Positions 1-10,762 of a DNA stretch of 10,762 bases are shown here, piece after piece. The stretch spans positions 1-10,762 of IMG/VR virus record IMGVR_UViG_3300005977_000052, one strand, 5' to 3'. Numbering within the stretch: position 1 is the first letter of the stretch; the number at the start of each line of letters is the position of its first letter. The notes beneath the pieces are model-generated. The model ran no database searches, was not told the DNA's origin, and worked only from the letters and a program-made list of their open reading frames with translations. The translations under genes and the position numbers were made by a program.

Positions 1-510
1 CATACCTGGGACTATTCCGTGGATTTCCTCGAAGCCAAGAAAGTCCTCATTAACGCATACAAACAGCTGTTTGATCTAAACTTGATGCCCTACGAGGCGT
101 ACGTTGCCATCCTCCTCATACAACTAACCAACGGATCCAGAATCAAAGAAGCGATAAGGGCGTTTAAGACGTTCGTAGAGTCAGGGCAAAGAGAGTTCCA
201 GTTAGAGGCTGAGAAGCACGGTAACACAAGGGTCTTCATTATTCATGAGGTTATCAGGAACAGGCTAGCGTATAAATCGATACTGACAATCTCTGACGAC
301 AAACTAGAAGCCAGAATAAGGATGTTTGCACTGAAGTACCTGAAATGTAACACACATTCTCTTCGTTATGCACTAATCTCCTTCCTTGCAAAAAACGGCA
401 CAGACCCTGCAATCATCGCGAAGATAACGGGACACAGAGATTACAGATATATTGTAGGGTACACACAGACAAAAGACGCCATCGATATTTTGCGTAAGCT
501 TTCTTCCTAG
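1..510 (+). CDS. Tyrosine recombinase/integrase, catalytic domain; possibly 5'-truncated by the window edge
   Basis: Complete R-K-HxxR-H-Y catalytic set in the 163-aa ORF: GSR(41)IKEA, K66, H113SLR116, TGH139, Y148. Frame 1 is open from base 1 (HTWDYS-VDFLE), so the GTG at 19 may not be the real start. Confidence 0.92.
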   Translation, partial: HTWDYSVDFLEAKKVLINAYKQLFDLNLMPYEAYVAILLIQLTNGSRIKEAIRAFKTFVESGQREFQLEAEKHGNTRVFIIHEVIRNRLAYKSILTISDDKLEARIRMFALKYLKCNTHSLRYALISFLAKNGTDPAIIAKITGHRDYRYIVGYTQTKDAIDILRKLSS

Positions 511-565
511 CTATCTTGACTACTTTTTTAAGCATATAATTCATATTATATAATCAGGTGAAAAG

Positions 566-778
566 ATGGTGGAACTAAAGTTACGCTGGAGGATTAAGAC
601 AACTAAGAAAAACGGTAAAATATATCCAATATACTATATAAGCGTCCCAGGACGTTCAGCTATATTTCTGTTGGATTATGAGCCATACCTAGACCCAGTA
701 AACAAGGTAATCGTTTTTAAACCTAAACAGACTAGCACCCAACAGAACAGTACCCAAGACCAACCCCAAAGTCAATAA
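566..778 (+). CDS. Small putative DNA-binding protein, AbrB/SpoVT-like swapped-hairpin regulator
   Basis: Pattern RIKTTKKNGKIYPIYYISVP...KVIVFKP resembles the AbrB beta-hairpin (basic turn, YxIxIP, C-terminal IVxKP strand). Low-complexity Q/S/T tail. TATA-like TTTTTAAG near 525-532 and RBS AGGTG at 556-560. Confidence 0.55.
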   Translation: MVELKLRWRIKTTKKNGKIYPIYYISVPGRSAIFLLDYEPYLDPVNKVIVFKPKQTSTQQNSTQDQPQSQ

Positions 779-806
779 TTCTTTTCTTTTTCCCTTCTCT
801 CTTTTT

Positions 807-822
807 AACAGCTGTTTTAAGA
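807..822. repeat. Palindromic motif copy AACAGCTGTT-TTAAGA
   Basis: Seen directly; follows the T-rich terminator of the 566-778 gene. Confidence 0.9.
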
Positions 823-836
823 TGCTCTGCTCGTAG

Positions 837-871
837 TTCCCGTCTAACTTGTTGTGCAGAAATTTTAAATA
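837..871 (+). promoter_or_regulatory. Operator-like palindrome plus BRE/TATA promoter, copy 1
   Basis: TTCCCGTCTAAC-TT-GTTGTGCAGAAA (837-862), then TTTAAATA (864-871), 24 nt before ATG 895 (leaderless geometry). Confidence 0.85.
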
Positions 872-894
872 CCAGTCCTAACAATAGTTAAACA

Positions 895-1086
895 ATGACG
901 CCCCAGGAAGAAATAATAAAGGAAATCATAAATATGTTAGAAAAGGACTTCAGCCAGTTGCAGAAAATCGTCTATGAGATTATTAATACGAAAAATAATT
1001 TGGACAGGAAGAAGCTAGGAGAAGCATATTTTATCACACAGAAAATCGATATGGAACTATATAGATTAATTCTCTCTGTTACCTAA
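895..1086 (+). CDS. Hypothetical 63-aa helical protein; paralogue of the C-terminal domain of ORF 1611-2048
   Basis: Has its own promoter and terminator. Shares LE..L..VYEI...DR.K..EAYF..Q.I...L with the 145-aa protein. Confidence 0.85.
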   Translation: MTPQEEIIKEIINMLEKDFSQLQKIVYEIINTKNNLDRKKLGEAYFITQKIDMELYRLILSVT

Positions 1087-1103
1087 AAGCCAACCCGTTT
1101 TTT
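1087..1103 (+). terminator. Conserved oligo-T terminator AAGCCAACCCGTTTTTT
   Basis: Directly after the stop codon. Identical copy at 2047-2063 and a variant at 1423-1442. Archaeal terminators are oligo-T tracts. Confidence 0.75.
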
Positions 1104-1118
1104 ATTCACTTATTCTGC

Positions 1119-1132
1119 AAAACAGCTGTTTT
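1119..1132. repeat. Perfect 14-bp palindrome AAAACAGCTGTTTT
   Basis: Seen directly. Confidence 0.95.
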
Positions 1133-1161
1133 AGAGTTTCATTGGATGCCAAGCCCGTTAG

Positions 1162-1196
1162 TTTCAGCCTAACAAGTTGGACAGAAAACTTAAATA
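1162..1196 (+). promoter_or_regulatory. Operator-like palindrome plus BRE/TATA promoter, copy 2
   Basis: TTTCAGCCTAAC-AA-GTTGGACAGAAA (1162-1187), then CTTAAATA (1189-1196). The downstream TAAATACCAGTC is shared with copy 1. Confidence 0.88.
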
Positions 1197-1229
1197 CCAG
1201 TCTTAACACAATAGTAATGAGGAGGAAAA

Positions 1230-1418
1230 ATGATAGTAGAAGTTAAGAAAAAAGAAGATATAGTACAATTTTTAATTAATTCAAACGACACAGTAGAAAT
1301 TCCTATGAAAGAATTTTTGCAATGTATTAAGATTAAAAAAGAACTAGGTTATGGCTCTTCTGCAGAAAGAGAAGCGATTTTCAATTATATTTTATATAAA
1401 AAGTGTACCTTAACATAG
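1230..1418 (+). CDS. Hypothetical 62-aa protein
   Basis: Strong RBS GAGGAGG just upstream, own promoter, and terminator at 1423-1442. Confidence 0.8.
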   Translation: MIVEVKKKEDIVQFLINSNDTVEIPMKEFLQCIKIKKELGYGSSAEREAIFNYILYKKCTLT

Positions 1419-1422
1419 ACAC

Positions 1423-1442
1423 AAACCAATCCGTTTTTTTTT
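1423..1442 (+). terminator. Terminator variant AAACCAATCCGTTTTTTTTT
   Basis: Variant of the 1087/2047 terminator, 4 nt after the stop codon. Confidence 0.7.
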
Positions 1443-1457
1443 ATCCTTTCTCCTAAC

Positions 1458-1469
1458 AAACAGCTGTTT
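1458..1469. repeat. Palindrome AAACAGCTGTTT
   Basis: Seen directly; followed by TAAAGA. Confidence 0.95.
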
Positions 1470-1544
1470 TAAAGATGTGTTCGTCGTACCCAGCCCTCGA
1501 CCTGCTCCTTGTTTTGTGAGGCAAGGTCTGTCGTTCGTTCGCCA

Positions 1545-1579
1545 TTTCAGCCTAACTAGTTAGACAGAAACTTTATATA
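1545..1579 (+). promoter_or_regulatory. Operator-like palindrome plus BRE/TATA promoter, copy 3 (most symmetric)
   Basis: TTTCAGCCTAAC-TA-GTTAGACAGAAA (1545-1570) with perfect core CTAACTAGTTAG, then TTTATATA (1572-1579). Confidence 0.9.
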
Positions 1580-1610
1580 TCATGAAAGCAAAATGTATAC
1601 TGGGTAAAAT

Positions 1611-2048
1611 ATGGCAAAGTTAAGTAGGAGGGAATTCCAGAAAATGAAAAAGAGAGCAATAGTACAACTCAGGCATCTTGTGCTAGGGTATTATATTGGA
1701 ACGTTTACTGACGAGAACTGTATTAGGATGAACATGGGTTACGATCAAATCGAAGTTATAAATGTTCCTCAGGTACCGTTTCGTACTAAAAATGGGAATC
1801 TTGTTGTAATCGAAGCTAGAATAGTAGTTACCGGAAACGGAAGTGATAGCATCAACATTTGTGCTGGTGATGTGGAGTTTTTAGAAAATTACATAAACGT
1901 CTTAAAGGAACTTGTTTATGAGATCCAAAGATCGATGCGTGTTCCTAGTTCATTTGATAGAGAGAAAATAAAAGAAGCATATTTCGCTGTGCAAAATATT
2001 CAGAGGTATCTGGAAAAGTTATACCCGTTCGCCGAGGCTGATTCATAA
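1611..2048 (+). CDS. Hypothetical 145-aa two-domain protein (basic N-terminal/beta region plus helical C-terminal domain shared with ORF 895-1086)
   Basis: Own promoter and terminator; internal paralogy with the 63-aa ORF. Confidence 0.88.
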   Translation: MAKLSRREFQKMKKRAIVQLRHLVLGYYIGTFTDENCIRMNMGYDQIEVINVPQVPFRTKNGNLVVIEARIVVTGNGSDSINICAGDVEFLENYINVLKELVYEIQRSMRVPSSFDREKIKEAYFAVQNIQRYLEKLYPFAEADS

Positions 2049-2065
2049 GCCAACCCGTTTTTTTT
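2047..2065 (+). terminator. Conserved oligo-T terminator AAGCCAACCCGTTTTTTTT
   Basis: 17 nt identical to 1087-1103; overlaps the stop codon. Confidence 0.75.
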
Positions 2066-2134
2066 GTTTCCTATTTCTCTCAAGCAGTTGTTAAGACCCC
2101 TTTCTTCTCTCCTTCCACACCTACCTCCCAACAA

Positions 2135-2169
2135 ACTTCTCCTAACTCGTTATGTAGAAAACTTATATA
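2135..2169 (+). promoter_or_regulatory. Operator-like palindrome plus BRE/TATA promoter, copy 4
   Basis: ACTTCTCCTAAC-TC-GTTATGTAGAAA (2135-2160), then CTTATATA (2162-2169). A degenerate AGCAGTTGTTAAGA motif lies upstream at 2083-2096. Confidence 0.82.
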
Positions 2170-2201
2170 GCTGAGTTAGCACACATATATAATGACCAAA
2201 T

Positions 2202-2762
2202 ATGTCCTCTCCACATCCACAGGTTAAATCAAATCCTAAGTCAGATCAAACTACTAATTCTACTCTAACGTGGGAGGAGATCTTACGGGCTACAAGAATA
2301 GATAAACAGCATATAGATTTTGCAATAGCTCATATCGATACTGCACCAGATATGCCGTATGAATTCATTTACAGCAAATATATCCCTTCGGATTTCAAAG
2401 TCTTCCATCCCACTAGTGTTGCGGTTAGCGGGGCAGGAGGAGTGATAGGGTCTATTTTAGCTTTAAGACATGCCAGAGCAGTTAAGTACTTTGTAACAAC
2501 CCAAGAAGTACTGAATTCCAACGACAAATCTCCATTATTTCTAGCGAAGTATGCTTTAGAATTATTAGAGAAAAAATACAGAGATGTAGAAATAATTACA
2601 ATAGACCTTGGTGAGTTCGAGAAAATAAAGATACTGTTAAGTTATGGCGGGATATATATATCAGGGTTGCCTAATGAGATTATCGTTGAGATTGCCCAAT
2701 TAGCGGGTTTTGGAAGATTATGGCATTACTCGCCTATTCATCGAAAGTTCTACGTGTTCTAA
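2202..2762 (+). CDS. Hypothetical protein, possibly a degenerate DnaC/IstB-like P-loop fold
   Basis: Order of motifs VAVSGAGGVIGS (Walker A-like, no Lys), YFVTTQEVL and KYRDVEIITIDLG (Walker B-like) resembles DnaC/IstB by eye only. The CDS is solid; the fold call is weak. Confidence 0.5.
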   Translation: MSSPHPQVKSNPKSDQTTNSTLTWEEILRATRIDKQHIDFAIAHIDTAPDMPYEFIYSKYIPSDFKVFHPTSVAVSGAGGVIGSILALRHARAVKYFVTTQEVLNSNDKSPLFLAKYALELLEKKYRDVEIITIDLGEFEKIKILLSYGGIYISGLPNEIIVEIAQLAGFGRLWHYSPIHRKFYVF

Positions 2763-2779
2763 ATTTCGAGGTGACAACA

Positions 2780-3523
2780 GTGAACGAACAACAGTTTGAG
2801 CCAGAAATAAAAAAATTCAAATGGTTATTGAATAGGGGTTACATTACTCCTAAGGAGCTGGAGTTTTACAGCAACTTTTATCAAATCGAAACGACAACAA
2901 TAGTGAATTTTAAAGGGCATGATGTACTAACTCCGTTGTTTATACTAGCAAAACCCAGCCAATTTAATGACATAAAAAAAGAATTACCCCAAGCAGAAAT
3001 AGCAGACCCGATTTCAAGAAAGTTCCCTGTGGTTTCCTTACTAAGTCTAGAAAAGTTTATCAATTCCCTTGTAAATCTGAAAATACCCTACTTGTTCTTC
3101 TCATTATTCTTACATAATTCGTATAATCCTCCACAACAAGTTCACATACTTTTGTCCGCTTTAATTGAACTAGCAAACATTTCAAATAGACACATCATTA
3201 AACCTTACAACATAAAAATAAAACCTTTGCCGTTAGAAGAGCCTATTCCAGTAAGTAATCAACTGTACAAAATCATTTGCCATTACAAGAAAATGCTAGG
3301 TGAGAGAGTTGAGTGTGACGAGGGAGAATGGTGGAAATATAATCTCTGGGGAAAGGATACTATCAGTACCAGTACAGTTGACAGAAAAGTGATAGAGAAA
3401 TTAGCAGTACAATATAACATATCGCCCATATGTGTTCATTACATAATATATTATAACAAAAACATATGCGGACTTTCGACTGATATCATAAATAAAATAA
3501 AATCCCATCTCTCTTCTTCTTAA
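2780..3523 (+). CDS. Hypothetical protein, possible inactive HhH-GPD/AGOG-like C-terminal fold
   Basis: Preferred start is the in-frame GTG 2780 with RBS GAGGTGA at 2768-2774, which avoids overlap with the upstream gene. Contains PIPVSNQL and EKLAVQYNISPICVHYIIY segments. T-tract follows the stop. Confidence 0.5.
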   Translation: MNEQQFEPEIKKFKWLLNRGYITPKELEFYSNFYQIETTTIVNFKGHDVLTPLFILAKPSQFNDIKKELPQAEIADPISRKFPVVSLLSLEKFINSLVNLKIPYLFFSLFLHNSYNPPQQVHILLSALIELANISNRHIIKPYNIKIKPLPLEEPIPVSNQLYKIICHYKKMLGERVECDEGEWWKYNLWGKDTISTSTVDRKVIEKLAVQYNISPICVHYIIYYNKNICGLSTDIINKIKSHLSSS

Positions 3524-3533
3524 TTTTTTCCCT

Positions 3534-4055
3534 CTACATAGTATTCGTATTCTCCTTTCTCTCTCTTTTTGCTATCTTTTTTGCATCTATCACTTCTACT
3601 ACCCCTTCTTCTTCCAGATATTCTAGCACTGCGTCACTATCATCTATCACTATCGCCTTATCTTGGTCATATTTTTCCATTAGCTCCTTTACAACGATTC
3701 TCTTAAATTCATGATCTTTCCTGAAGTCCTTCTCGCCCCTTAGCACGACCTCGTTCGGCTCTATCCCTATCTCTGACAGTTGTTTGAGAGTAACTTCACG
3801 CTGTTTTTCTGAACGACCGCTGACTATGACGATAACTTCTGGCTTTTCCTCCTCAATTAATCGTTTGACAAACTTGATAACTTCCCACTTAGGTTCGTCC
3901 AAGTTCATGAACCTCGGTGATTGATAACATTCCCAAAACACACGGTCGGGTTTCCAAGATAATGTTTTCTTGTCTCCTCTGGATATCTTCTCGCATTCGT
4001 TCCACCTGGCAGAAGTGTCGAAAAGCGTGCCATCCATATCCAAGACCAGCATCAT
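3534..4055 (-). CDS. HAD-superfamily phosphatase, polynucleotide kinase 3'-phosphatase (PNKP C-terminal)-like
   Basis: Motif I LVLDMDGTL, motif II IVSGR, motif III RKDHEFK, motif IV VIDDS; the LRGEKDFRKD segment is typical of this subfamily. Confidence 0.9.
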   Translation of the reverse strand: MMLVLDMDGTLFDTSARWNECEKISRGDKKTLSWKPDRVFWECYQSPRFMNLDEPKWEVIKFVKRLIEEEKPEVIVIVSGRSEKQREVTLKQLSEIGIEPNEVVLRGEKDFRKDHEFKRIVVKELMEKYDQDKAIVIDDSDAVLEYLEEEGVVEVIDAKKIAKRERKENTNTM

Positions 4056-4630
4056 TTTGCTCCACTCCCTGGTTCCTTAAAACCTAGTATTGTTATTTTC
4101 CCGTTCTCTTCTTTGAACTCTAACTCCTTAGCTTCTCCCTCGACACTGTACACAAAGTAAAACGTTTTGAGACCCTTACCGTCTCTTTCCCACTCCAGTT
4201 TACTACATTTCCCATCAAATCTACTATGGAAGTAGTCTATCGCCTCTTGGTCGTTCTGTTCTTTTGCTATTTTTTCTAACGTTGCAGGGTCAAACGGTTG
4301 ATAGAATAAGTAGACCTTCTTATTGCCTTTTCCATCATCAAAAAAGAAGTATATTCCGTATTTGAACAGGTTAAGGTTTGACGTCGTTATTATTTCACGG
4401 TGTTTCATGATATATTCGTTGTCCGCAACGGCAGAAATATAAAGTGTATCATGTCCGTCACCTATGCCTATACATAGCAGGTTTGTGTGTACGATTTTGT
4501 CGTTTTTGATCCTGTCCATTCTCACATAGAAAGAGATATACGCTACACCTATGACAGGTTTAGCCTGGGGCATGAACCCTTCCACACGCACTATGAAGTA
4601 TTTGTCTATATCGACTTTCGAGTTTACCAT
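4052..4630 (-). CDS. Hypothetical beta-rich protein (about 192 aa), co-transcribed with the HAD gene
   Basis: Preferred start is ATG 4630, 23 nt after a minus-strand TATA TTTTTAAA (4653-4660). Its stop overlaps the HAD start (ATGA, 4052-4055). Confidence 0.8.
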   Translation of the reverse strand: MVNSKVDIDKYFIVRVEGFMPQAKPVIGVAYISFYVRMDRIKNDKIVHTNLLCIGIGDGHDTLYISAVADNEYIMKHREIITTSNLNLFKYGIYFFFDDGKGNKKVYLFYQPFDPATLEKIAKEQNDQEAIDYFHSRFDGKCSKLEWERDGKGLKTFYFVYSVEGEAKELEFKEENGKITILGFKEPGSGAK

Positions 4631-4672
4631 GTTAGATTCTTCGCATGATAGCTTTAAAAAGCAGACTGACAA

Positions 4673-4715
4673 AATGAACGGTAAGCCTCGACCTTTAGGG
4701 TGGGGAGGAGGTTAG
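4673..4715 (+). mobile_element. IS200/IS605-type right-end hairpin remnant
   Basis: AAGCCTCGACCTTTAGGGTGGGGAGGAGGTTAG resembles the Sulfolobales IS605/tnpB right end as I recall it (CCTCGCCCTTTAGGGCGGGGAGGAAGTCAG). Similar copy at 8882-8922. Confidence 0.7.
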
Positions 4716-4720
4716 TTTTC

Positions 4721-4736
4721 AAACATCTGTTTAAGA
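4721..4736. repeat. Palindrome variant AAACATCTGTTT-AAGA
   Basis: One mismatch to the consensus; lies between divergent promoters. Confidence 0.8.
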
Positions 4737-4786
4737 GCAAATCCCTTCTGGTTGGTTTTTAAACCTTTTCTGTGGAAAGTAAAGAT

Positions 4787-5074
4787 ATGAAACCCGAGTG
4801 TAAAGTTCTGTTAAAAGCGTTTGAGATTCTTTCTACAATCCAAAGCAAATACGATAATGATTTTCCGGAGATGTTATCGTACATGTACCTTGTGGTCAAA
4901 GGGTACTGGACTGTTAACAATAACGGAGAAACCGTAGAAGTGGAAAAACCACCGTTTTCGAGTATAGCCCTCTTTAACGCCATGAAGGAGATCACAGAAA
5001 GAGTCAGGAACGGTGCTACAATTGAAGAAATTGCAAACGAAAAGGAACTATGCGGTGATGTTGAGGAGATATGA
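4787..5074 (+). CDS. Hypothetical protein (about 95 aa), first gene of a five-gene operon
   Basis: Preferred start is ATG 4787, 24 nt after TATA TTTTTAAA (4756-4763). ATGA overlap with the next gene. Confidence 0.8.
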   Translation: MKPECKVLLKAFEILSTIQSKYDNDFPEMLSYMYLVVKGYWTVNNNGETVEVEKPPFSSIALFNAMKEITERVRNGATIEEIANEKELCGDVEEI

Positions 5075-5487
5075 CAGTAGCAAATTCAACCGTAATAAAT
5101 GCGTTACCACCCTTTTTCTACACCCAAGTCTTTCTTGTTGACGTTGCAGGTGGATTCGTTGTACTGACAATAATTGAGCTATTTCTGCTAAGAAACAGCA
5201 GTTTGACACATCTGCGACTTGCCTTGCCGTTCCTAACGTTTTCCATCGGCTTTACTCTTATTTCCATATACCTTTCCCCATACGTAACATATAACCCTGT
5301 GTACACCTCGCCGTACAATGTCACATATAGAATTACACCTTACAGTACCGACGGTGCCGTACTCCTATACATCAGTATCGCAGTCCTTGCCATGGCTATA
5401 GCATACTTTGTTTATGCGTTTGCTGTTGATGTATTACACATTTCCTTTGGCAGTAGTAGTGATAATGACGGTTATTTCATACCTTAG
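5071..5487 (+). CDS. Membrane protein with about 3 TM helices
   Basis: Three long hydrophobic segments; N-x-S/T sequons (NST, NSS, NVT); RBS GAGGAG. Confidence 0.8.
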   Translation: MTVANSTVINALPPFFYTQVFLVDVAGGFVVLTIIELFLLRNSSLTHLRLALPFLTFSIGFTLISIYLSPYVTYNPVYTSPYNVTYRITPYSTDGAVLLYISIAVLAMAIAYFVYAFAVDVLHISFGSSSDNDGYFIP

Positions 5488-5490
5488 GGG

Positions 5491-6078
5491 GTGATACCAG
5501 TGTTACTGTTTAAGAAGAAGAAAAAAACATCACCAATCGTCTATAAGGACTATGACGCCTTATTACTTTTGCCTCCAGCGTTAGTCAGCATTGATAAAAA
5601 AACGAAGGTAATAGAAAACAACGGTGTACATGTCGCGATAATGTATTCTGAAACTAGCGGTATTTCCGTGATGATGGACTTACCCACAGATTTCCTGAAA
5701 TTATACTATAAGATGACCACACAGATAAACCAGGGAAACCCGAGTGATAGGATAGTCTATTTTGCAATGGTTTACATTTCTCCGGAAGAGTATGCAAGAA
5801 AGAGAGAGAAAATACTAAAAATTGGTGCGAACGCTAAAAGGAAGTTTTTCGTCTACCCAAGGTGGATCTGGCTCATCCTGGAACGTTATAACGACGCACT
5901 GAATTATTTCGTCATAAACAAATTTGAAGACGACGACCCTGGAAACTTCTCGAAGGAATTTGACACGTTCGGTGCCGTTGGGCTTACCTATAATAATTAC
6001 TTCATTTTCGCCAGCGTTGCGAGGAAGGACTACATAGATTCCGTAAATAAACGGAGATCCCTCGGTCTCTGGTGGTGA
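5491..6078 (+). CDS. Hypothetical protein, 195 aa
   Basis: Long ORF tightly packed in the operon; GTG start; poly-Lys near the N-terminus. Confidence 0.75.
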   Translation: MIPVLLFKKKKKTSPIVYKDYDALLLLPPALVSIDKKTKVIENNGVHVAIMYSETSGISVMMDLPTDFLKLYYKMTTQINQGNPSDRIVYFAMVYISPEEYARKREKILKIGANAKRKFFVYPRWIWLILERYNDALNYFVINKFEDDDPGNFSKEFDTFGAVGLTYNNYFIFASVARKDYIDSVNKRRSLGLWW

Positions 6079-6605
6079 TAATGTCTCTCTCGCATTTGCA
6101 ATCACTCGTTGGGAAAAACGTAATACTGTTCAACTACCTACGTAATGTATTCAAGAATAAGATATACAAAATAGCCGAAAGTGAGGGTGAATACACTCTT
6201 CATGTCGATATGGGGATACCTAGCAGGTTACAGCACAGGATCGCACATCCCGGCATTTACTTTGTCACAGATGTCATGATACAAGGTACTAACTATGCGA
6301 TTTATCTGAAAAAACAAGTAGACCTAAAGAAGTTTGCACTAGTAAGCTCGATAGCAACGTCTGAGTATTACATTTCCTCGTATCGTAAAGTACAGTATAA
6401 AACAAATGGAGGGTACACATTTGACGCTTTAGAATTCGATATAGGTGGGTTTCACCACCTTGTGTTTAATTACAACAAATGTATTATAGCGAAAGTGAAA
6501 AAGTCAGGTCAGAGACGCATCGCCGTATGTCTAGGTGATAGTGTAGTTATAGATGATATAAACAATGTTACGTGTAGTGACTGTGAGTGGTTTAGTGTAG
6601 AGTGA
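6072..6605 (+). CDS. Hypothetical protein with Cys-containing C-terminus (CSDC); real start may be ATG 6081
   Basis: Long ORF in the operon; GGTGGTGA RBS-like sequence before 6081. Confidence 0.75.
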   Translation: MVIMSLSHLQSLVGKNVILFNYLRNVFKNKIYKIAESEGEYTLHVDMGIPSRLQHRIAHPGIYFVTDVMIQGTNYAIYLKKQVDLKKFALVSSIATSEYYISSYRKVQYKTNGGYTFDALEFDIGGFHHLVFNYNKCIIAKVKKSGQRRIAVCLGDSVVIDDINNVTCSDCEWFSVE

Positions 6606-6616
6606 GGTGGTAGACA

Positions 6617-7273
6617 ATGGCATATAATAAAAAACAAAACGAAGTCCCTACTCCTGAACAATTCCAGTTCATTGTCTATAAAGAGGTATGCATGGGGGAC
6701 AAAAGCCTTGTACATCCTACTTTGGCTATAGAGAGGCTGAACACTGTAATGCTTACCTATTACACCGACGAGATAGAAGAGTTATGGAGGGAATTAGTCC
6801 TAAAAAGATATGAGAATGCGACATCTGAGGACGAACTAAGGCAGATACTAAAGATCGGTTGCGATATAATGTTTATCGTAATGAACGCGTCTGGCGAGGA
6901 CGTTAAGTCGTTAGTAACGAAAATACTGAACAGCACAAGGAAAAAACATCTGTTTTATGTTAACGAAGAAGGACTAGTTGCTGAAAGCTCGTATCTTATA
7001 GACGTGCTGACAAGGTTTGTGAACCCCAACGGGTTCGACGTGTTGACTGTCCTAAGCATACTAAAGGACGTGCAAATTAGGACGGCTACTATGATTAGCA
7101 GTATTAAGGGGACGTCGCTGTATCAGTCGCTTGTAAGTGAACTAGGAATAGATGAAAATGTCATTGAGAAAAAATGCACGGCGAAGTACTATAGGGAATG
7201 CGTAACTGAGAAGAAAACACAATTGCTGAAAGCGTTGCAGTTTATCAGGATGAATATAAATATTCCGCGTTAA
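6617..7273 (+). CDS. Hypothetical helical protein, 218 aa
   Basis: RBS GAGGTGG upstream; last gene of the operon. Confidence 0.8.
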   Translation: MAYNKKQNEVPTPEQFQFIVYKEVCMGDKSLVHPTLAIERLNTVMLTYYTDEIEELWRELVLKRYENATSEDELRQILKIGCDIMFIVMNASGEDVKSLVTKILNSTRKKHLFYVNEEGLVAESSYLIDVLTRFVNPNGFDVLTVLSILKDVQIRTATMISSIKGTSLYQSLVSELGIDENVIEKKCTAKYYRECVTEKKTQLLKALQFIRMNINIPR

Positions 7274-7336
7274 AGCTACAAGGATTTTCCAGTTCTAAAA
7301 GAGATCTGTACTCTTGGGCGAAAGATAAAATAATTT

Positions 7337-7353
7337 AAACAGCTGTTTTAAGA
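7337..7353. repeat. Palindrome AAACAGCTGTTT-TAAGA
   Basis: Seen directly. Confidence 0.95.
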
Positions 7354-7393
7354 CCTTATCCTTCGCTCCGTCGCCGTCCACCAATCACCTTGT

Positions 7394-7430
7394 TTACTGC
7401 CTAATTGGTTGAGGAAGAGAGTTTTAAATA
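7394..7430 (+). promoter_or_regulatory. Degenerate operator-like palindrome plus TATA, copy 5
   Basis: TTACTGCCTAAT-TG-GTTGAGGAAGAG (7394-7419), then TTTAAATA (7423-7430). Spacing is 1-2 nt longer than in copies 1-4. Confidence 0.6.
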
Positions 7431-7461: not shown

Positions 7462-8850
7462 ATGAGGATAGATATTCCAAAAAGTGACGGTACTACAATT
7501 TCGCTGTATCCATTAGATGAATATCTCTCTCATGTCCTTTTTGATCACTTCGTTTTAACTGGAGACTTTGTACGTCACGAAGAATTGTCAGACGAATATA
7601 ACGGATCATTGAAATTAGTTGACTATAAGCCTATGGCAACATTTAGTCCCGAGAATTCGCAAGGATATATGCCATTTATAATTAAAATGAGTACTTCACC
7701 CGAGGAATACTACAGTCTCGGATACCCAAAGGGAATAGTGCATTGTGGAGAAAAAACCATATACCTCAAATTAGGTGAGCTTAGCAGGAAAATCAAAAAA
7801 GTATACGATTACACAATTAGTAAGAGGATTGTCCATGTTAAAATAATACGAGGTAGTACAACTAAAGATTTTGATTTTGATGTGGTCATATTAAAGGACG
7901 GGTACTCTGCTGATCCGCGTTTCAAAGATGAGCGTATATCAGCTAAGAAAAAAATAAAAGAATTAATTCAAATGTTAGAATCTGAGATTCCTACAATCCG
8001 AGAAGATTTCAGGATCGAATATAATTTTTACACTTATCCAGATAATCCACTCCTATACCCACACATTTTACTCATCCCTAAATTGGTTATAAAGGAAATT
8101 TCCGATTTCTTATTATCTGAGTACGAACAAACTTATGGCATTGTTACAAAACTACCAGCAGAATTTGTACCTAATGAAAATGTTCATAGTCCTGAGTTGC
8201 TGAAATTCCTTAATAAGATACCATTTGAACTTTTTACCAAAGCGGTTATAGGCTTGTATGCCTCTCATCCTGCTGTACTATTACCCGAAGGTGACTATTC
8301 ACAATATCTCACGGGCAATGAGCGTGTGGTCAATATCAACCTAGCGAAAAACGTTGTCGTTGTAATAGTTTTTGGTAATTCTCAGGAACAACAAAACGTA
8401 GAGCAGAATAAGGAGGAAGAAAATAGAAATACTGAGGAAAATAAAGTAGAAAAAGTACCTAATAATGTTGTCGAAGGATTAGGTAAGGAAATCCAGTCTA
8501 TTTATGAATCAATAATTCAAGACGATTCAATAAACGTTGAGAAAAAGAAACATCGACTTAAGACACTGAACGAAGCCTTAGACGAACTAGGCAAAGCAAT
8601 ATTGGATGCATTAAAAAGTCAAACCCCGCTGAACGCTAATGAGCTAAGAAAATATACAGAAGATATAGTTAAAAGTGCTGGACTGTTATATACTAATAAT
8701 TTTAAGTATTACCTCAGTTATTATGAACGTTCTTTAAACGAAACTGCAGAGCTTGAAGTACTAGCTACACTTTTGGATTCTATTGGGAAAACAATGTATG
8801 ATATAGATAAAAAAATAAAAGAATATAATTCGCTACAATTAACATATTAA
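7462..8850 (+). CDS. Hypothetical 462-aa protein: globular N-terminus, E/N/K-rich linker, helical or coiled-coil C-terminus
   Basis: Longest ORF, with its own promoter. Linker QEQQNVEQNKEEENRNTEENKVEK. No family recognised. Confidence 0.85.
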   Translation: MRIDIPKSDGTTISLYPLDEYLSHVLFDHFVLTGDFVRHEELSDEYNGSLKLVDYKPMATFSPENSQGYMPFIIKMSTSPEEYYSLGYPKGIVHCGEKTIYLKLGELSRKIKKVYDYTISKRIVHVKIIRGSTTKDFDFDVVILKDGYSADPRFKDERISAKKKIKELIQMLESEIPTIREDFRIEYNFYTYPDNPLLYPHILLIPKLVIKEISDFLLSEYEQTYGIVTKLPAEFVPNENVHSPELLKFLNKIPFELFTKAVIGLYASHPAVLLPEGDYSQYLTGNERVVNINLAKNVVVVIVFGNSQEQQNVEQNKEEENRNTEENKVEKVPNNVVEGLGKEIQSIYESIIQDDSINVEKKKHRLKTLNEALDELGKAILDALKSQTPLNANELRKYTEDIVKSAGLLYTNNFKYYLSYYERSLNETAELEVLATLLDSIGKTMYDIDKKIKEYNSLQLTY

Positions 8851-8881: not shown

Positions 8882-8922
8882 GGGAGTGGAAAGCCTCGCC
8901 TTCAAGGTGGGGAGGAAGTCAG
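8882..8922 (+). mobile_element. Minimal IS200/IS605-type hairpin element
   Basis: GTTAA|GGGAGTGGAAAGCCTCGCCTTCAAGGTGGGGAGGAAGTCAG: stem CCTCGCC/GGTGGGG ending in GGAAGTCAG; lies between convergent genes. Confidence 0.75.
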
Positions 8923-8935
8923 CTTAAAAAAGAAT

Positions 8936-9211: not shown

Positions 9212-9241
9212 ACTGGTATATAAACCTCAAACAGCTGTTTG
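9212..9241 (-). promoter_or_regulatory. Promoter with palindrome CAAACAGCTGTTTG next to the BRE/TATA
   Basis: Minus strand reads CAAACAGCTGTTTG-AGG-TTTATATA-CCAGT. The TATA-CCAGT context matches promoter copies 1 and 2. Confidence 0.8.
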
Positions 9242-9259
9242 TGAGAGCGGAATACGGGT

Positions 9260-9295
9260 CTGATCCCCCTGGGAGGGTGAGGTTTCCCGCTCATT
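9260..9295 (-). mobile_element. Possible third, decayed IS605-type end remnant
   Basis: Minus strand AATGAGCGGGAAACCTCACCCTCCCAGGGGGATCAG aligns loosely with AATGAACGGTAAGCCTCGACC...GTTAG at 4673-4715. Confidence 0.4.
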
Positions 9296-9959
9296 AACTT
9301 CCATTTAAAACTACGGAAAATATCGTAGTGTTTTGTGCATATATAACTAGAGTATTATCACATATGTACGATTTTACTTCTCCACCATCATGTGCCACTA
9401 TTATGCTTCCATTTATTGGGTAGTATAATGTCTGTTCTATCAGTGCTGTTCCATTTATTGTGATTTTTCCTTTTTGCACTGTTATATGCCCGTTATATAG
9501 TATCTGCCAGCCGTATTCCGATACACCATACGATGAGTTGTATATTACAGTAAAACTAGGATTTACGATAGGATATACCGTACCTGCAGGAGCGAATCCG
9601 CTTATAGATAAGACAGCAGTTTGAGTACTGTACAGGTAGAATGTAATTACATAGGGAGAGTTTTGTGAAATGGCAATAGTAGGATCTGGTGCCGTAACGT
9701 TTACTATAACATATTCGTGCGGTTTTAGGATTATTATGTTTTGGTACCAACGATGACTGTTAATTACCGGCACCAATACATATGTTTTATTGGTAGGGTT
9801 TTGTATGCATATCGTTAGCACGTTGTACTTATTTATTTCTCCTACGTCGTAGAAATCCAGTACCTTTGCATGCAATTGTGGTTGATAGAAAAAAATAGAA
9901 AACGTGAAAAGGGATGGTATTATAACTACTAACATTAGTATGATTTCAAACTTTTGCAT
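9294..9959 (-). CDS. Membrane-anchored extracellular beta-rich protein
   Basis: N-terminal TM/signal segment; many N-glycosylation sequons (NKT, NVT, NSS, NGT, NGS, NTT); 14-nt overlap with the upstream GT-C-like gene. Confidence 0.8.
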   Translation of the reverse strand: MQKFEIILMLVVIIPSLFTFSIFFYQPQLHAKVLDFYDVGEINKYNVLTICIQNPTNKTYVLVPVINSHRWYQNIIILKPHEYVIVNVTAPDPTIAISQNSPYVITFYLYSTQTAVLSISGFAPAGTVYPIVNPSFTVIYNSSYGVSEYGWQILYNGHITVQKGKITINGTALIEQTLYYPINGSIIVAHDGGEVKSYICDNTLVIYAQNTTIFSVVLNGS

Positions 9960-10762
9960 CTTTCATCATCCATACTGCATATTGTAATGCAAAATAAAAT
10001 GTAAAATATCCCAAATCTCTAAAAGAGAATATCCATATTAACGCCGGAAGACCCCAAGCTAATTCTTTCTTATTATTATATAGTAGGATTAATGCAAAAA
10101 GAGACACCTCAAGTACGGTATACACGAATGAGGGGATAGGTAAGCCGAACGCAGTAAGGAGTGAAAACGAAACGCCCTGCTGTGCAACAGGTTGTGTAAT
10201 AGTTATAACGGACGCAAGGTATTGCTTTGAAATGAAGGGTATTGATGAGAGCAGTAGCGGTAACGCGAATTCTATTATCTTTCTAAGTTTCTGTCTTTCA
10301 AATTTAATTAGAAGAATAGCTATCAGTATCGCAAACTGTTTTACGTCTGCAGAGATTCCTAGGAGCAGGTATCTGAATCTCTCATTAAGTAGGGCAAGAA
10401 ACGCAATAGAATATGCAAAAAGGTTCAGTTCTTGCCCTGTCGCAAAATCATATGAAAGTGCGGGAAATAGGAAAAAAGATGCGATGAAAGCGTTTTCGTG
10501 TCTTTTGAGGAAGGAATACGTGAAAGCTAAAACAGCTGTTATTACGTTTACTGTTTCAAGGTTATGCAAAACCGCAACGCTGATGAACGATAATGGGGGG
10601 TAAATATAGACGGTCGGCAGAAATGAGTTTGACGTAGTGCCGGTAACAACGTTATACGGAACGTGATATATGAAAAATGCTTTAGTCATTGAGTAAAGGT
10701 ACGGGTTTTTTCCGTCGAGGAATAAGTGTGACGCGTATAATATTGTTGCTTCTTCATCCGTG
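9946..10762 (-). CDS. Multi-pass membrane protein, GT-C fold glycosyltransferase-like (GT87/DUF2029-type); 5'-truncated
   Basis: Frame stays open beyond ATG 10689 to the window end and reads TDEEATILYASHLFLDGKNPYLYS-MTK. The TDE, G.NPY and Y.YPPL motifs, a later VKQF and multiple TM helices are typical of GT-C enzymes. Confidence 0.65.
   Translation of the reverse strand, partial: TDEEATILYASHLFLDGKNPYLYSMTKAFFIYHVPYNVVTGTTSNSFLPTVYIYPPLSFISVAVLHNLETVNVITAVLAFTYSFLKRHENAFIASFFLFPALSYDFATGQELNLFAYSIAFLALLNERFRYLLLGISADVKQFAILIAILLIKFERQKLRKIIEFALPLLLSSIPFISKQYLASVITITQPVAQQGVSFSLLTAFGLPIPSFVYTVLEVSLFALILLYNNKKELAWGLPALIWIFSFRDLGYFTFYFALQYAVWMMKDAKV

What the first reader, a model, noticed from the sequence alone, without database searches (positions are those of the whole stretch)
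837..7430. 26-bp palindromic operator phased to the TATA box defines a five-promoter regulon, with attC-core-like arms
Seen: copies at 837-862, 1162-1187, 1545-1570, 2135-2160 and, degenerate, 7394-7419. Consensus is about TTTCAGCCTAAC-NN-GTTRGACAGAAA, with a different central dinucleotide in each copy (TT, AA, TA, TC, TG). In copies 1-4 the GTT begins exactly 13 nt before the TATA 8-mer and the right arm supplies the BRE. Copies 2 and 3 match the integron core consensus RYYYAAC/GTTRRRY exactly (GCCTAAC..GTTGGAC, GCCTAAC..GTTAGAC), and the site can also be parsed as a dif-like 11-6-11. Inference: fixed phasing and a variable centre favour a dimeric transcription-factor site competing or cooperating with TFB. 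Recombinase binding, that is an integrase acting as regulator, is a less likely alternative.
Basis: partly seen in the sequence, partly recalled or inferred. Interest (0 to 1): 0.75.

Follow-up and report, generated by a model that had tools for sequence, protein, structure and literature searches.

The report
Palindromic operator on archaeal-virus promoters
A 26-bp near-palindrome pressed against the TATA box of four genes (plus one decayed copy) in this hot-spring archaeal virus fragment is a real, conserved regulatory site shared by the Sulfolobus monocaudavirus group; it matches the published "regulatory sequence" of their predicted early/anti-defence genes and is not an integron- or dif-like recombination site.

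Summary
The window is a complete 10.7-kb IMG/VR contig from a relative of Sulfolobus monocaudaviruses SMV3 and SMV4 (Bicaudaviridae). There are four strong copies of TTTCNNNCTAAC-NN-GTTRNNYAGAAA, each 13 nt ahead of a TATA 8-mer, and a fifth copy that is a decayed orthologue of intact sites in relatives.

I found 43 distinct copies of the same palindrome+TATA module in relatives. In SMV3, SMV4, SMV2 and YNP1 they precede the genes that Bhoobalan-Chitty et al. 2024 list as predicted anti-defence genes. That paper already describes BRE-overlapping inverted repeats in SMV2 as a likely repressor site.

The arms are conserved independently, with no compensatory changes, and do not fold as single strands. 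The palindrome also occurs without a TATA box about 98 nt upstream of capsid genes. Three lineage-specific variants exist. All this favours a dimeric protein-binding site.

The attC, dif and integrase readings are not supported. ATV and ATSV carry the same integrase family but no palindrome, and homology breakpoints fall outside the palindrome.

The best candidate binder, by inference only, is the 70-aa protein next to the integrase: it has the matching phyletic profile, and its tandem-domain form in SMV2 goes with an asymmetric operator.

Verdict: new member of a known kind, moderate interest.

The parts
837..871 (+). Operator copy 1 (837-862) plus BRE and TATA 8-mer (864-871). Promoter of ORF 895-1086.
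   Evidence: PWM score 47.3. Orthologous sites precede the D-63 genes of SMV3, L004, L017, L046 and L054.
895..1086 (+). 63-aa protein of the SSV1 D-63 family. This is the first gene under the operator.
   Evidence: Pfam PF20940, E = 5.5e-18, 65.1 bits against a cutoff of 27. The SMV3 orthologue gp48 is listed as 'ADa' in PMC11065993 Supplementary Data 1.
1162..1196 (+). Operator copy 2 (1162-1187) plus TATA (1189-1196). Promoter of ORF 1230-1418 (62 aa, unknown function).
   Evidence: score 45.5; phrog_15325 only.
1545..1579 (+). Operator copy 3 (1545-1570), the best palindrome in the window, plus TATA (1572-1579). Promoter of ORF 1611-2048 (145 aa, with a C-terminal D-63 domain).
   Evidence: score 45.6. 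Pfam PF20940, E = 1.2e-6, on residues 90-138. The SMV4 orthologue gp40 is ADG.72 in PMC11065993.
2135..2169 (+). Operator copy 4 (2135-2160) plus TATA (2162-2169). Promoter of ORFs 2202-2762 and 2780-3523, which are homologues of virion structural proteins.
   Evidence: score 35.8. phrog_17386 and phrog_16306 'virion structural protein', E = 1e-80 and 7e-84. The orthologous promoter is conserved in 10 contigs.
7394..7430 (+). Decayed operator copy 5 (7394-7419) plus TATA (7423-7430). Promoter of ORF 7462-8850 (462 aa).
   Evidence: PWM score 14.6; 8 mismatches and offset 15. Orthologous to intact sites at L024:55, L039:5905 and L046:9111. The N-terminus of the ORF resembles virion protein SMV1 gp05.
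566..778 (+). 70-aa basic, beta-rich protein. This is the best candidate for the operator-binding regulator (inferred).
   Evidence: phrog_18276. Homologues occur in SMV1-4, YNP1 and YNP2 only. Its phyletic profile is matched by only one other of 110 SMV1a ORFs, the 223-aa membrane protein gp27. Tandem-domain versions occur in SMV2 and YNP2. AF2 pLDDT is 72.8 with a hairpin-helix-hairpin topology. No fold assignment was obtained.
500..511 (+). Degenerate left half-site TTTCTTCCTAGC across the integrase stop codon, about 45 nt upstream of the TATA region of the 70-aa gene.
   Evidence: Relatives have a perfect TTTCT(A/G)CCTAAC at this position. In SMV2 a full palindrome overlaps the TATA box of the homologous gene gp40. 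Coding constraint from the integrase C-terminus is an alternative reason for the conservation.
806..822 (.). AACAGCTGTTTTAAGA, a second palindromic motif. It lies 14-70 nt upstream of each operator; other copies are at 1120, 1458, 2083 (degenerate) and 7337, and also at 4721 and 9229.
   Evidence: 11 matches against 0.78 expected. It coincides with homology breakpoints between relatives.
1087..1103 (+). AAGCCAACCCGTTTTTT, a T-rich terminator-like element that closes each gene unit. Also at 1423-1439 and 2047-2063.
   Evidence: family D11. The terminator function is inferred from the known oligo-T termination signals of archaea.
1..510 (+). C-terminal 169 residues of a tyrosine integrase. The contig starts inside the gene.
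   Evidence: phrog_9208, E = 2e-95; Pfam Phage_integrase, E = 1.5e-6. 74-87% identical in SMV1-4, YNP1/2, ATSV and ATV.

Best explanation
The 26-bp element is the operator half of a portable operator-promoter module of about 40-50 bp: left arm, 2 free bases, right arm that doubles as the BRE, TATA box and a short leader. Sulfolobus monocaudavirus-type viruses place this module in front of single accessory genes.

The most likely mechanism is that a virus-encoded protein binds the two half-sites as a dimer. Because the proximal half-site is the BRE and abuts the TATA box, binding excludes TFB/TBP and shuts these strong promoters off together. This would make them an early-expressed regulon that is then repressed.

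The same palindrome placed about 98 nt upstream of the start codons of two virion-protein genes in complete relatives (SMV1a gp03, called the major capsid protein in PMC12199143, and gp11, annotated as a major head protein, with their SMV3/SMV4 counterparts), about 45 nt upstream of their own BRE/TATA, suggests that the factor also acts there from a distance, possibly as an activator.

Shown here:
- The elements exist and recur beyond chance.
- Their phase to the TATA box is nearly fixed.
- They are conserved across at least 13 contigs and genomes.
- They coincide with published predicted early/anti-defence promoters.

Inferred:
- That a protein binds the site.
- That binding represses transcription.
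- That the binder is the 70-aa protein encoded at 566-778 (my confidence in that identity is about 0.4).
For: The window is a relative of SMV3/SMV4, at 82-84% identity over 54-57% of its length.

Recurrence:
- Four copies match, with none of 200 shuffles reaching the count.
- A PWM built from 9 sites finds the module in SMV3 before gp46, 47, 48, 62, 63, 69 and 71. In SMV4 it lies before gp39, 40, 58 and 61, and in SMV1 before an unannotated RHH ORF.
- It occurs in 11 further IMG/VR contigs, giving 43 distinct sites.

Match to the literature: these are the genes that PMC11065993 lists as ADG/ADa (SMV3 gp46, 47, 48, 62, 69, 71; SMV4 gp40, 61; SMV1 nORF). [quoted passage not shown]

Protein site rather than folded DNA:
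- Symmetric positions per site average 8.33 of 12, against 8.36 when arms are shuffled between sites (p = 0.72).
- Single-stranded folds give 0 to -1.1 kcal/mol, no better than shuffles.

Autonomy from the promoter:
- Near-perfect palindromes without an adjacent TATA box lie at about -98 to -110 of SMV1a gp03 and gp11, SMV3 gp03 and gp16, and SMV4 gp02 and gp14.
- SMV1a has exactly three palindromes. gp03 and gp11 are the two genes that PMC12199143 names as full-time/late exceptions inside the early region.

Lineage-specific operator classes in the same phase:
- SMV1/3/4 and the window: CTAAC..GTTAG.
- SMV2: CTTAC..GTCAG.
- YNP1: TTTTTGCC..GGCAAAAA, a symmetric C>T / G>A change.

Candidate binder:
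- The 70-aa family is present in every operator-bearing complete genome and absent from ATV and ATSV, which have no operator.
- Among 110 SMV1a ORFs, only its homologue gp33 and one 223-aa membrane protein have that profile.
- SMV2, whose operator is consistently asymmetric, encodes a fused two-domain version.
- 8 of the 16 family clusters in 1.84 billion representatives are tandem.
- The gene lies next to the operator cluster in the window, L004, L036 and SMV3, with two or more further genes between in SMV4, L017 and L054.
Against: - No binding, footprint, transcription start site or expression data exist for this contig.
- The 70-aa family has no Pfam, NCBIfam or PDB relative, and no significant structural neighbour. 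The tandem-protein model is unreliable (pLDDT 56.8). Its DNA binding is therefore pure inference.
- YNP2 has a family member but no recognisable operator.
- SMV1-4 are related, so the phyletic argument rests on few independent events.
- The outer left arm is poorly conserved at the TATA-adjacent sites (2.49 against 1.47 mismatches). Part of the right-arm conservation is simply the BRE.
- Orthologous promoters are conserved over about 110 nt, so footprinting among orthologues does not single out the palindrome.
- A host factor is not excluded, because the genome scan meant to test this was uninformative.
- The regulon includes homologues of virion proteins, so 'anti-defence' is not an adequate label. 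Repression rather than activation at the TATA-adjacent sites is assumed from geometry alone.
Confidence: 0.7

Rival explanations
1. The operator is real, but it is bound by a different factor. Candidates are the D-63-family protein encoded just downstream (labelled 'ADa' in the 2024 paper), the aCcr1-type RHH protein that itself carries the operator, a gp37-like coiled-coil protein (the paper's proposal for SMV2), or a host transcription factor.
For: - D-63 is the first gene of the cluster, and its orthologue is flagged ADa.
- RHH genes in SMV1, SMV3 and SMV4 carry the operator, which would fit autoregulation.
- The paper proposes SMV2 gp37.
- Nothing here excludes a host factor (one search was uninformative).
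Against: - D-63 homologues are absent from SMV1a, SMV2 and YNP1, which all have operators. On established knowledge the family forms a four-helix bundle, with no DNA binding shown.
- Viral aCcr1 homologues were shown to bind a different 9-bp box (PMC9976878). ATV has one but has no palindrome.
- The gp37 family is found only in SMV2 among the genomes tested.
- Lineage-specific operator variants argue for a virus-encoded factor rather than a host one.
Confidence: 0.2
2. There is no dedicated regulator. The module is just an unusually strong extended core promoter that spread by duplication and recombination between gene units. On this view the left arm is a passenger, or a mirrored BRE-like sequence.
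For: - The BRE and TATA box account for much of the right-hand conservation.
- Copies 1 and 2 share 50 nt at 80% identity, including the leader (D3), which points to module transfer.
- Promoter modules lie at homology breakpoints (for example 1196).
- PMC11065993 stresses the shared strong promoter core.
Against: - The nearly invariant CTAAC of the left arm lies 15-19 nt upstream of the BRE and has no known basal-factor contact.
- Full palindromes occur without any adjacent TATA box, at a conserved -98 position in three viruses.
- Symmetric class changes occur in YNP1, and a fixed asymmetric class occurs in SMV2.
- The flanks of paralogous copies are unrelated.
Confidence: 0.07
3. The palindrome is a recombination site (attC-like, dif-like or an att core) bound by the adjacent tyrosine integrase. 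It would serve either for cassette exchange or with the integrase moonlighting as a regulator.
For: - The operator cluster lies next to or near the integrase gene in the window, SMV2, SMV3, SMV4 and YNP1.
- The region is cassette-like and variable between relatives.
- Copies 2 and 3 match RYYYAAC/GTTRRRY.
- Inverted arms of this size resemble tyrosine-recombinase core sites (established knowledge).
Against: - ATV and ATSV encode the same integrase family (74-77% identity, the same as SMV2) but have no palindrome.
- Breakpoints cluster at the AACAGCTGTT motif and at terminators. The left arm and its upstream flank travel with the downstream gene.
- There are 3-8 copies per genome, nearly all TATA-phased in the direction of the downstream gene (one SMV2 copy is inverted and one sits between divergent genes), which would be deletion-prone.
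- There is no arm covariation and no single-strand hairpin.
- The site is 26 bp, against 57-141 bp for attC, and the RYYYAAC heptamer is not enriched.
- No Rfam or tRNA-like att signal was found.
Confidence: 0.03

Closest known systems
Virus-specific 'consensus regulatory sequences' of predicted anti-defence genes in Sulfolobales viruses (Bhoobalan-Chitty et al., Nat Commun 2024, PMC11065993), in particular the BRE-overlapping inverted repeat described for SMV2 and MAG JAKMAB010000038.1
   Same: - The virus group is the same.
- The promoters are the same: the window's units are syntenic with SMV3 gp48, gp47 and gp46 and with SMV4 gp40 and gp39. Apart from SMV4 gp39, these are listed there as ADG/ADa.
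- The architecture is the same: strong BRE+TATA plus a shared flanking sequence, with an inverted repeat over the BRE.
- The proposed logic is the same: an early regulon shut off by a repressor.
   Different: - The paper discusses the palindrome explicitly only for SMV2 and one MAG; its logos are images.
- It proposes a coiled-coil protein (gp37) as the binder, which I find only in SMV2.
- It does not mention the -98 sites at capsid genes, the three operator classes, or the 70-aa family.
- Nothing has been tested experimentally for SMV-type viruses.
Aca-operator circuits of bacteriophage anti-CRISPR operons (Aca1, Aca2 and others; established knowledge, reviewed in PMC13551039)
   Same: A small dimeric repressor binds inverted repeats that overlap a strong early promoter. 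The regulator is encoded next to the genes it controls.
   Different: - Those are bacterial sigma-70 promoters with HTH (or RHH) regulators.
- This is an archaeal BRE/TATA promoter, with single-gene units rather than one operon.
- The candidate protein has no recognisable DNA-binding fold.
Fusellovirus and rudivirus transcription regulators acting at BRE/TATA (SSV1 F55, SIRV1 SvtR, host Sta1; established knowledge, not tested here)
   Same: Small virus-encoded proteins bind repeats at or near the BRE/TATA of several viral promoters and time their expression.
   Different: - Those are RHH or wHTH proteins with different site sequences; the F55 sites are direct repeats.
- No sequence relationship to this palindrome or to the 70-aa family was found.
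Integron attC sites and Xer/dif or SSV-type att core sites
   Same: They are imperfect inverted repeats near a tyrosine-recombinase gene. The heptamers of copies 2 and 3 fit RYYYAAC/GTTRRRY.
   Different: - The length, structure, copy number and phyletic distribution do not fit.
- The position of breakpoints does not fit.
- The constant phase to a TATA box does not fit either (see the membership test).

Membership tests
SMV/SYV1-type ADG regulatory module (PMC11065993) | A strong archaeal core promoter (BRE plus TATA box) in front of a single gene rather than an operon-internal gene. | tested here: met
   TATA 8-mers at 864, 1189, 1572, 2162 and 7423 are each preceded by AGAAA(A/T/C). They lie 31-41 nt before the ATG (31 nt for copy 1, 39-41 nt for copies 2-5).
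SMV/SYV1-type ADG regulatory module (PMC11065993) | The same flanking sequence around the core promoter is shared by several promoters of one genome. | tested here: met
   A 38-nt family with four members (D1); none of 200 shuffles reached the count.
SMV/SYV1-type ADG regulatory module (PMC11065993) | Orthology to promoters that the paper itself lists (SMV3 gp46/47/48, SMV4 gp40). | tested here: met
   Syntenic sites at L001 3845, 4231 and 4738 and at L002 4845 and 5441; gene list from Supplementary Data 1.
SMV/SYV1-type ADG regulatory module (PMC11065993) | Immediate-early expression and anti-defence function of the downstream genes. | not testable with these tools
   There is no transcript data for this contig. 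The downstream genes are D-63-like proteins, unknowns and homologues of virion structural proteins, so an anti-defence role is unproven.
Integron attC | An imperfect palindrome of 57-141 bp with paired R''/L'' and L'/R' cores that folds as single-stranded DNA. | tested here: not met
   The site is 26 bp with cores only 2 nt apart. Single-strand folds give 0 to -1.1 kcal/mol, no better than shuffles.
Integron attC | Structure rather than sequence is conserved, shown by compensatory changes between the arms. | tested here: not met
   Sequence is conserved and there is no covariation: 8.33 against a null of 8.36.
Integron attC | The core heptamer match is informative. | tested here: not met
   RYYYAAC occurs 18 times against 26.6 expected by chance.
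Integron attC | An IntI-type integrase is adjacent and the cassettes are mostly promoterless. | tested here: not met
   The integrase is of the archaeal-virus type (phrog_9208). Every unit has its own TATA/BRE.
Tyrosine-recombinase core site (dif / att) | Presence of the site follows presence of the recombinase. | tested here: not met
   The integrase is 74-77% identical in ATV and ATSV. These have none or one chance-level palindrome.
Tyrosine-recombinase core site (dif / att) | Exchange points lie in the central spacer. | tested here: not met
   Breakpoints lie at 805-808, 1131-1138, 1459 and 2092-2099 (the AACAGCTGTT motif) and after the TATA box (1196), not at the palindrome centres.
Tyrosine-recombinase core site (dif / att) | Integrase binds the site. 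| not testable with these tools
   This needs EMSA or footprinting.
SpoVT/AbrB-type swapped-hairpin DNA binders (considered for the 70-aa protein) | Sequence or structural similarity to the family. | tested here: inconclusive
   The AF2 topology of hairpin-helix-hairpin is compatible. Foldseek lists VapB and Sso7c4 only at E of about 4.7. There was no Pfam, NCBIfam or PDB-sequence hit.
SSV1 D-63 family (ORF 895-1083 and the C-terminus of ORF 1611-2045) | Pfam PF20940 above the gathering score. | tested here: met
   65.1 and 28.8 bits against a cutoff of 27.

The most novel reading that the evidence does not exclude
A tiny orphan protein family, made of beta-rich domains of about 55 residues, is a new kind of sequence-specific archaeal-virus transcription factor. 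It comprises window ORF 566-775, SMV1 gp33 and SMV2 gp40, and makes only 16 clusters among 1.84 billion representatives, half of them tandem.

On this reading it binds the 12-2-12 palindrome as a dimer or fused pseudo-dimer. It represses the accessory or early genes whose BRE it covers. From a fixed -98 position it also sustains or activates the highly expressed virion-protein genes (SMV1a gp03, called the major capsid protein in PMC12199143, and gp11). One factor would thus set the temporal programme of monocaudaviruses. Its specificity would have co-evolved with three operator classes, including an asymmetric operator matched to a two-domain protein.
Probability: 0.3. Interest if true: 0.6.

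Novelty: new member of a known kind. Interest (0 to 1): 0.4.

Why it matters
The element gives a concrete, testable handle on how large spindle-shaped archaeal viruses time their genes, which is almost unknown. It also allows promoters, and therefore candidate early, host-takeover or anti-defence genes, to be picked out of uncultivated hot-spring viral contigs by a simple motif scan.

The comparative work adds three leads not in the literature I could read:
- a specific candidate regulator, different from the published guess;
- a second, distal class of the same site at the capsid genes, which coincides with the two 'exception' genes in the published SMV1a transcriptome;
- lineage-specific operator variants suitable for specificity-swap experiments.

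It also removes a tempting but wrong integron analogy.

Tried and rejected
- **Plasmid collection:** no match.
- **Host-factor test:** I scanned 185,579 genomes for the 14-base core GCCTAAC-NN-GTTAGGC.
- **Fold of the 70-aa protein:** the monomer model is moderate (pLDDT 72.8) but has no significant PDB neighbour. The natural tandem homologue gave an unreliable model (pLDDT 56.8). Profile searches against PDB sequences, Pfam and NCBIfam found nothing. The exhaustive HMM search found only 16 clusters and no bridge to a known family.
- **Phylogenetic footprinting of orthologous promoters:** the whole ~110 nt is conserved, so this does not discriminate.
- **Operator in YNP2:** none found.
- **Literature search for the literal motif strings:** only irrelevant hits. 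The motif logos of PMC11065993 are images and could not be read. No supplements are held for the SMV1a transcriptome paper.
- **Rfam:** only one sub-threshold hit, unrelated to the palindrome.
- **tRNA-like att site:** none.

Full report
**What the window is.** The 10,762-nt window is identical to a whole IMG/VR contig, UViG_3300005977_000052. It is 82-84% identical over 54-57% of its length to Sulfolobus monocaudaviruses SMV3 and SMV4, and partly matches SMV1 and SMV2 (Bicaudaviridae). It has no plasmid match.

Gene order on the + strand:
- 1-510: the 3' part of a tyrosine integrase (phrog_9208, E = 2e-95).
- 566-778: a 70-aa protein (phrog_18276).
- 895-1086: a 63-aa SSV1 D-63-family protein (PF20940, E = 5.5e-18).
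- 1230-1418: a 62-aa protein of unknown function.
- 1611-2048: a 145-aa protein with a C-terminal D-63 domain.
- 2202-2762 and 2780-3523: two homologues of virion structural proteins.

These are followed by a HAD/PNKP-type phosphatase on the minus strand, a conserved five-gene block (4772-7273), a 462-aa protein (7462-8850) and minus-strand genes that are annotated as membrane proteins in SMV1/SMV3.

**The observation.** Copies 1-4 are far beyond chance: none of 200 shuffles reached the count. They form one 38-nt repeat family that includes the TATA box. The GTT of the right arm starts 13 nt before the TATA 8-mer in all four. The last bases of the right arm, AGAAA(A/T/C), fit the BRE consensus.

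Copy 5 is weak, with 8 mismatches and an offset of 15. It aligns base for base with intact sites in three related contigs, and the window copy carries a 1-nt insertion and substitutions in its right arm. It is therefore a decayed true member.

**Conservation elsewhere.** A weight matrix built from nine sites finds the palindrome+TATA module at these places:
- SMV3: before gp46, 47, 48 (syntenic with the window), 62, 63, 69 and 71.
- SMV4: before gp39, 40, 58 and 61.
- SMV1: before an unannotated RHH ORF.

A pattern scan of IMG/VR adds eleven more hot-spring contigs. This gives 43 distinct sites in all:
- The GTT-to-TATA offset is 13 in 32 sites, 14 in 8, 11 in 2 and 15 in 1.
- The centre takes nine different dinucleotides.
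- The consensus is the perfect palindrome TTTCTGCCTAAC-NN-GTTAGGCAGAAA.
- The CTAAC/GTT core and the GGCAGAAA of the proximal arm are the best-conserved positions.

**It is already in the literature, in outline.** Bhoobalan-Chitty et al. 2024 (PMC11065993) searched archaeal virus genomes for shared sequences around strong BRE/TATA promoters and called the downstream genes putative anti-defence genes. Their lists for SMV3 (gp46, 47, 48, 62, 69, 71), SMV4 (gp40, 61, 02), SMV1 (a new RHH ORF) and YNP1 (gp38-40) coincide with the sites I find. They state that the SMV2 motif and that of one MAG contain inverted repeats overlapping the BRE, likely a repressor site, and they propose the coiled-coil protein gp37 as the binder.

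The window is thus a new member of a described kind of element. No experiment on SMV-type operators is reported in the papers I could search.

**Protein site or folded DNA?** Across the 43 sites the two arms of one site are no more symmetric to each other than arms taken from different sites (8.33 against 8.36 of 12; p = 0.72). Each arm drifts independently around a palindromic consensus, which is what half-sites for a dimer do. A hairpin maintained by compensatory change would behave differently. As single strands the five window copies do not fold (0 to -1.1 kcal/mol at 37 °C, no better than shuffles), and the hosts live near 80 °C.

**The palindrome is autonomous.** In SMV1a there are exactly three palindromes, against 0.12 expected. 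One is TATA-adjacent. The other two are near-perfect and have no adjacent TATA box. They are centred about 100-110 nt upstream of gp03 and gp11, about 45 nt upstream of those genes' own BRE/TATA. The same arrangement is conserved at about -98 in SMV3 (gp03, gp16) and SMV4 (gp02, gp14).

The published SMV1a transcriptome singles out gp03 (the most highly expressed gene, the major capsid protein) and gp11. It describes them as the full-time/late 'exceptions' located in the early region (PMC12199143). This two-for-two coincidence suggests that the same factor acts there in a different mode. It is a correlation, not a test.

**Operator variants.** SMV2 carries TTTCTACCTTAC-NN-GTCAGGCAGAAA in the same phase before gp37, gp39, gp41 and gp51/52. 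It also carries an inverted copy overlapping the TATA box of gp40. YNP1 carries TTTTTGCCTAAC-NN-GTTAGGCAAAAA, which is a mirrored C>T / G>A change in both arms. ATV, ATSV and YNP2 have none.

**Who binds?**
- **Integrase.** The family is 74-87% identical in all of these viruses, including ATV and ATSV, so it does not predict the palindrome.
- **D-63.** Homologues are missing from SMV1a, SMV2 and YNP1.
- **gp37.** The family is confined to SMV2.
- **Viral aCcr1-type RHH proteins.** They bind a different 9-bp box, and ATV has one (PMC9976878).
- **The 70-aa family.** It is present in SMV1-4, YNP1 and YNP2 and absent from ATV and ATSV.

I screened all 110 ORFs of SMV1a for the profile 'present in SMV3, SMV4, SMV2 and YNP1, absent from ATSV and ATV'. 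Only gp33 (this family) and a 223-aa membrane protein qualify.

Further points in favour of the 70-aa family:
- SMV2 gp40 and YNP2 gp43 are natural fusions of two diverged copies of the domain, and SMV2 is the virus whose operator is consistently asymmetric.
- Half of the 16 clusters found in 1.84 billion representatives are tandem.
- In relatives, a perfect left half-site overlaps the integrase stop codon upstream of the gene. Coding constraint could also explain this.

The AF2 model (pLDDT 72.8) shows a basic beta-hairpin, a helix and a second hairpin. No fold or family assignment succeeded. I therefore rate the identity of the binder at about 0.4.

**The recombination reading.** RYYYAAC is not enriched (18 against 26.6 expected). 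The site is far shorter than an attC, shows no structural conservation, and always faces a TATA box.

Homology between the window and ten relatives breaks at 805-808, 1131-1138, 1459 and 2092-2099. These positions are at a second palindrome, AACAGCTGTT, and at the T-rich terminators. It also breaks just after a TATA box (1196), but never at a palindrome centre. The left arm and its upstream flank stay with the downstream gene in every context. The attC, dif and integrase ideas are therefore not supported.

**Side finding: a second palindrome.** Each unit is built as follows: terminator, AACAGCTGTTT(TAAGA), a 14-70 nt spacer, operator, TATA box, gene. The 3.9 kb from 807 to 4735 is absent from SMV1, which has a single AAACATATGTTTAAGAA at the junction.

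AAACAGCTGTTT with up to 1 mismatch is massively over-represented genome-wide: 25 copies in SMV1a, 34 in SMV3, 30 in SMV4, 11 in SMV2 and 10 in ATV, against about 0.1-0.3 in shuffles. 14 of the 25 SMV1a copies lie inside coding sequence. I have no explanation for this.

**Verdict.** The transcription-factor-operator interpretation is supported by comparative evidence. The integron, dif and integrase parts are rejected. The element is a new member of a kind already described in silico, with some new and testable leads.

Noticed in passing
window 61-72, 806-817, 1120-1131, 1458-1469, 4721-4732, 5193-5204, 6944-6955, 7337-7348, 9229-9240, 10530-10541; L066 (SMV1a) genome-wide: A second palindrome, AAACAGCTGTTT (extended forms CTCAAACAGCTGTTTGAG and CTCTAAAACAGCTGTTTTAGAG), has 11 copies in the window against 0.78 expected. 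It has 25-34 copies in SMV1a/3/4, 11 in SMV2 and 10 variant copies in ATV, but almost none in ATSV or YNP1/2. It lies upstream of nearly every operator, sometimes right next to or just after a TATA box, and 14 of the 25 SMV1a copies are inside genes. Its function is unknown; possibilities include a second regulator site, an architectural or packaging signal, or a recombination hotspot.
   Followed up: partly
window 807-4735 versus L010 (SMV1) 36864-36938: The 3.9-kb block holding the operator-bearing genes, the virion-protein pair and the phosphatase is absent from SMV1. In the window it is bounded by direct copies of the AACAGCTGTTT(TAAGA) motif, and SMV1 has one copy at the empty junction. 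Other relatives gain or lose whole gene units at the same motif (breakpoints at 805-808, 1138, 1459 and 2092-2099). This gives a cassette-like accessory island beside the integrase. These data cannot tell homologous from site-specific exchange.
   Followed up: partly
L066 (SMV1a) 505-530 and 15663-15688; L006 (SMV3) 1170 and 16172; L008 (SMV4) 649 and 15713; L045 2443; L058 4314: Near-perfect copies of the same 26-bp palindrome without an adjacent TATA box sit at a conserved ~-98 to -110 from the start codons of the major capsid protein gene and a second virion or membrane protein gene. In SMV1a these are the two genes reported as full-time/late exceptions in the published transcriptome.
   Followed up: partly
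L063/L068 (SMV2) gp40; L065 (YNP2) gp43; P0001, P0031-P0038: The 70-aa family often occurs as a fused two-domain protein. SMV2, which has such a fusion, has a consistently asymmetric operator (CTTAC on one side, GTCAG on the other).
   Followed up: partly
window 4672-4723 and 8885-8930: Two copies of a G-rich hairpin-like element (AAGCCTCGMCYTT-N-AGGGTGGGGAGGARGT) lie at the ends of convergent or divergent gene blocks. The first gives a sub-threshold Rfam HgcC hit (22.5 bits against a gathering score of 50). It also matches SMV1 sequence next to the annotated IS200/605 element and about 370 nt from an annotated MITE. RNA-fold z-scores are only -1.2 to -1.8. These may be remnants of transposon ends.
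   Followed up: partly
window 895-1083 and 1611-2045: The D-63 domain is encoded twice under the same operator type: once alone and once as the C-terminal third of a 145-aa protein. A DNA repeat at 1000-1031 and 1953-1984 reflects this.
   Followed up: yes
window 7462-8850: The 462-aa ORF behind the decayed operator looks chimeric. Residues 8-330 resemble the abundant virion protein gp05 of SMV1 (49% identity). Residues 336-462 resemble SMV3 gp35 (69% identity).
   Followed up: partly
window 9238-9296: A GC-rich stem (GAGCGG...CCGCTC) enclosing about 40 nt lies between two minus-strand genes, directly beside an AAACAGCTGTTT copy. The fold z-score on the minus strand is -1.7.
   Followed up: partly
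L064 (YNP1) gp65-gp70; L065 (YNP2) gp50-gp43; L194: In YNP-type viruses the 70-aa-family gene lies in the same co-directional gene string as a virus-encoded TFB (TFIIB) homologue.
   Followed up: no
window, leaders between TATA box and ATG (e.g. 1590-1600); relatives: Many operator-bearing promoters share a GTATAAT / GTAATAC / TGTATAC-like element near the expected transcription start. It is followed by a GGGG/GGTGA Shine-Dalgarno-like motif. The first element is reminiscent of the published aCcr1 box but was not tested.
   Followed up: no
window 1: The contig begins inside the integrase gene, at about residue 74 of 242. Some archaeal integrases carry attP inside their own gene (established knowledge), so an assembly break there could reflect mixed integrated and free forms. 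This was not examined.
   Followed up: no
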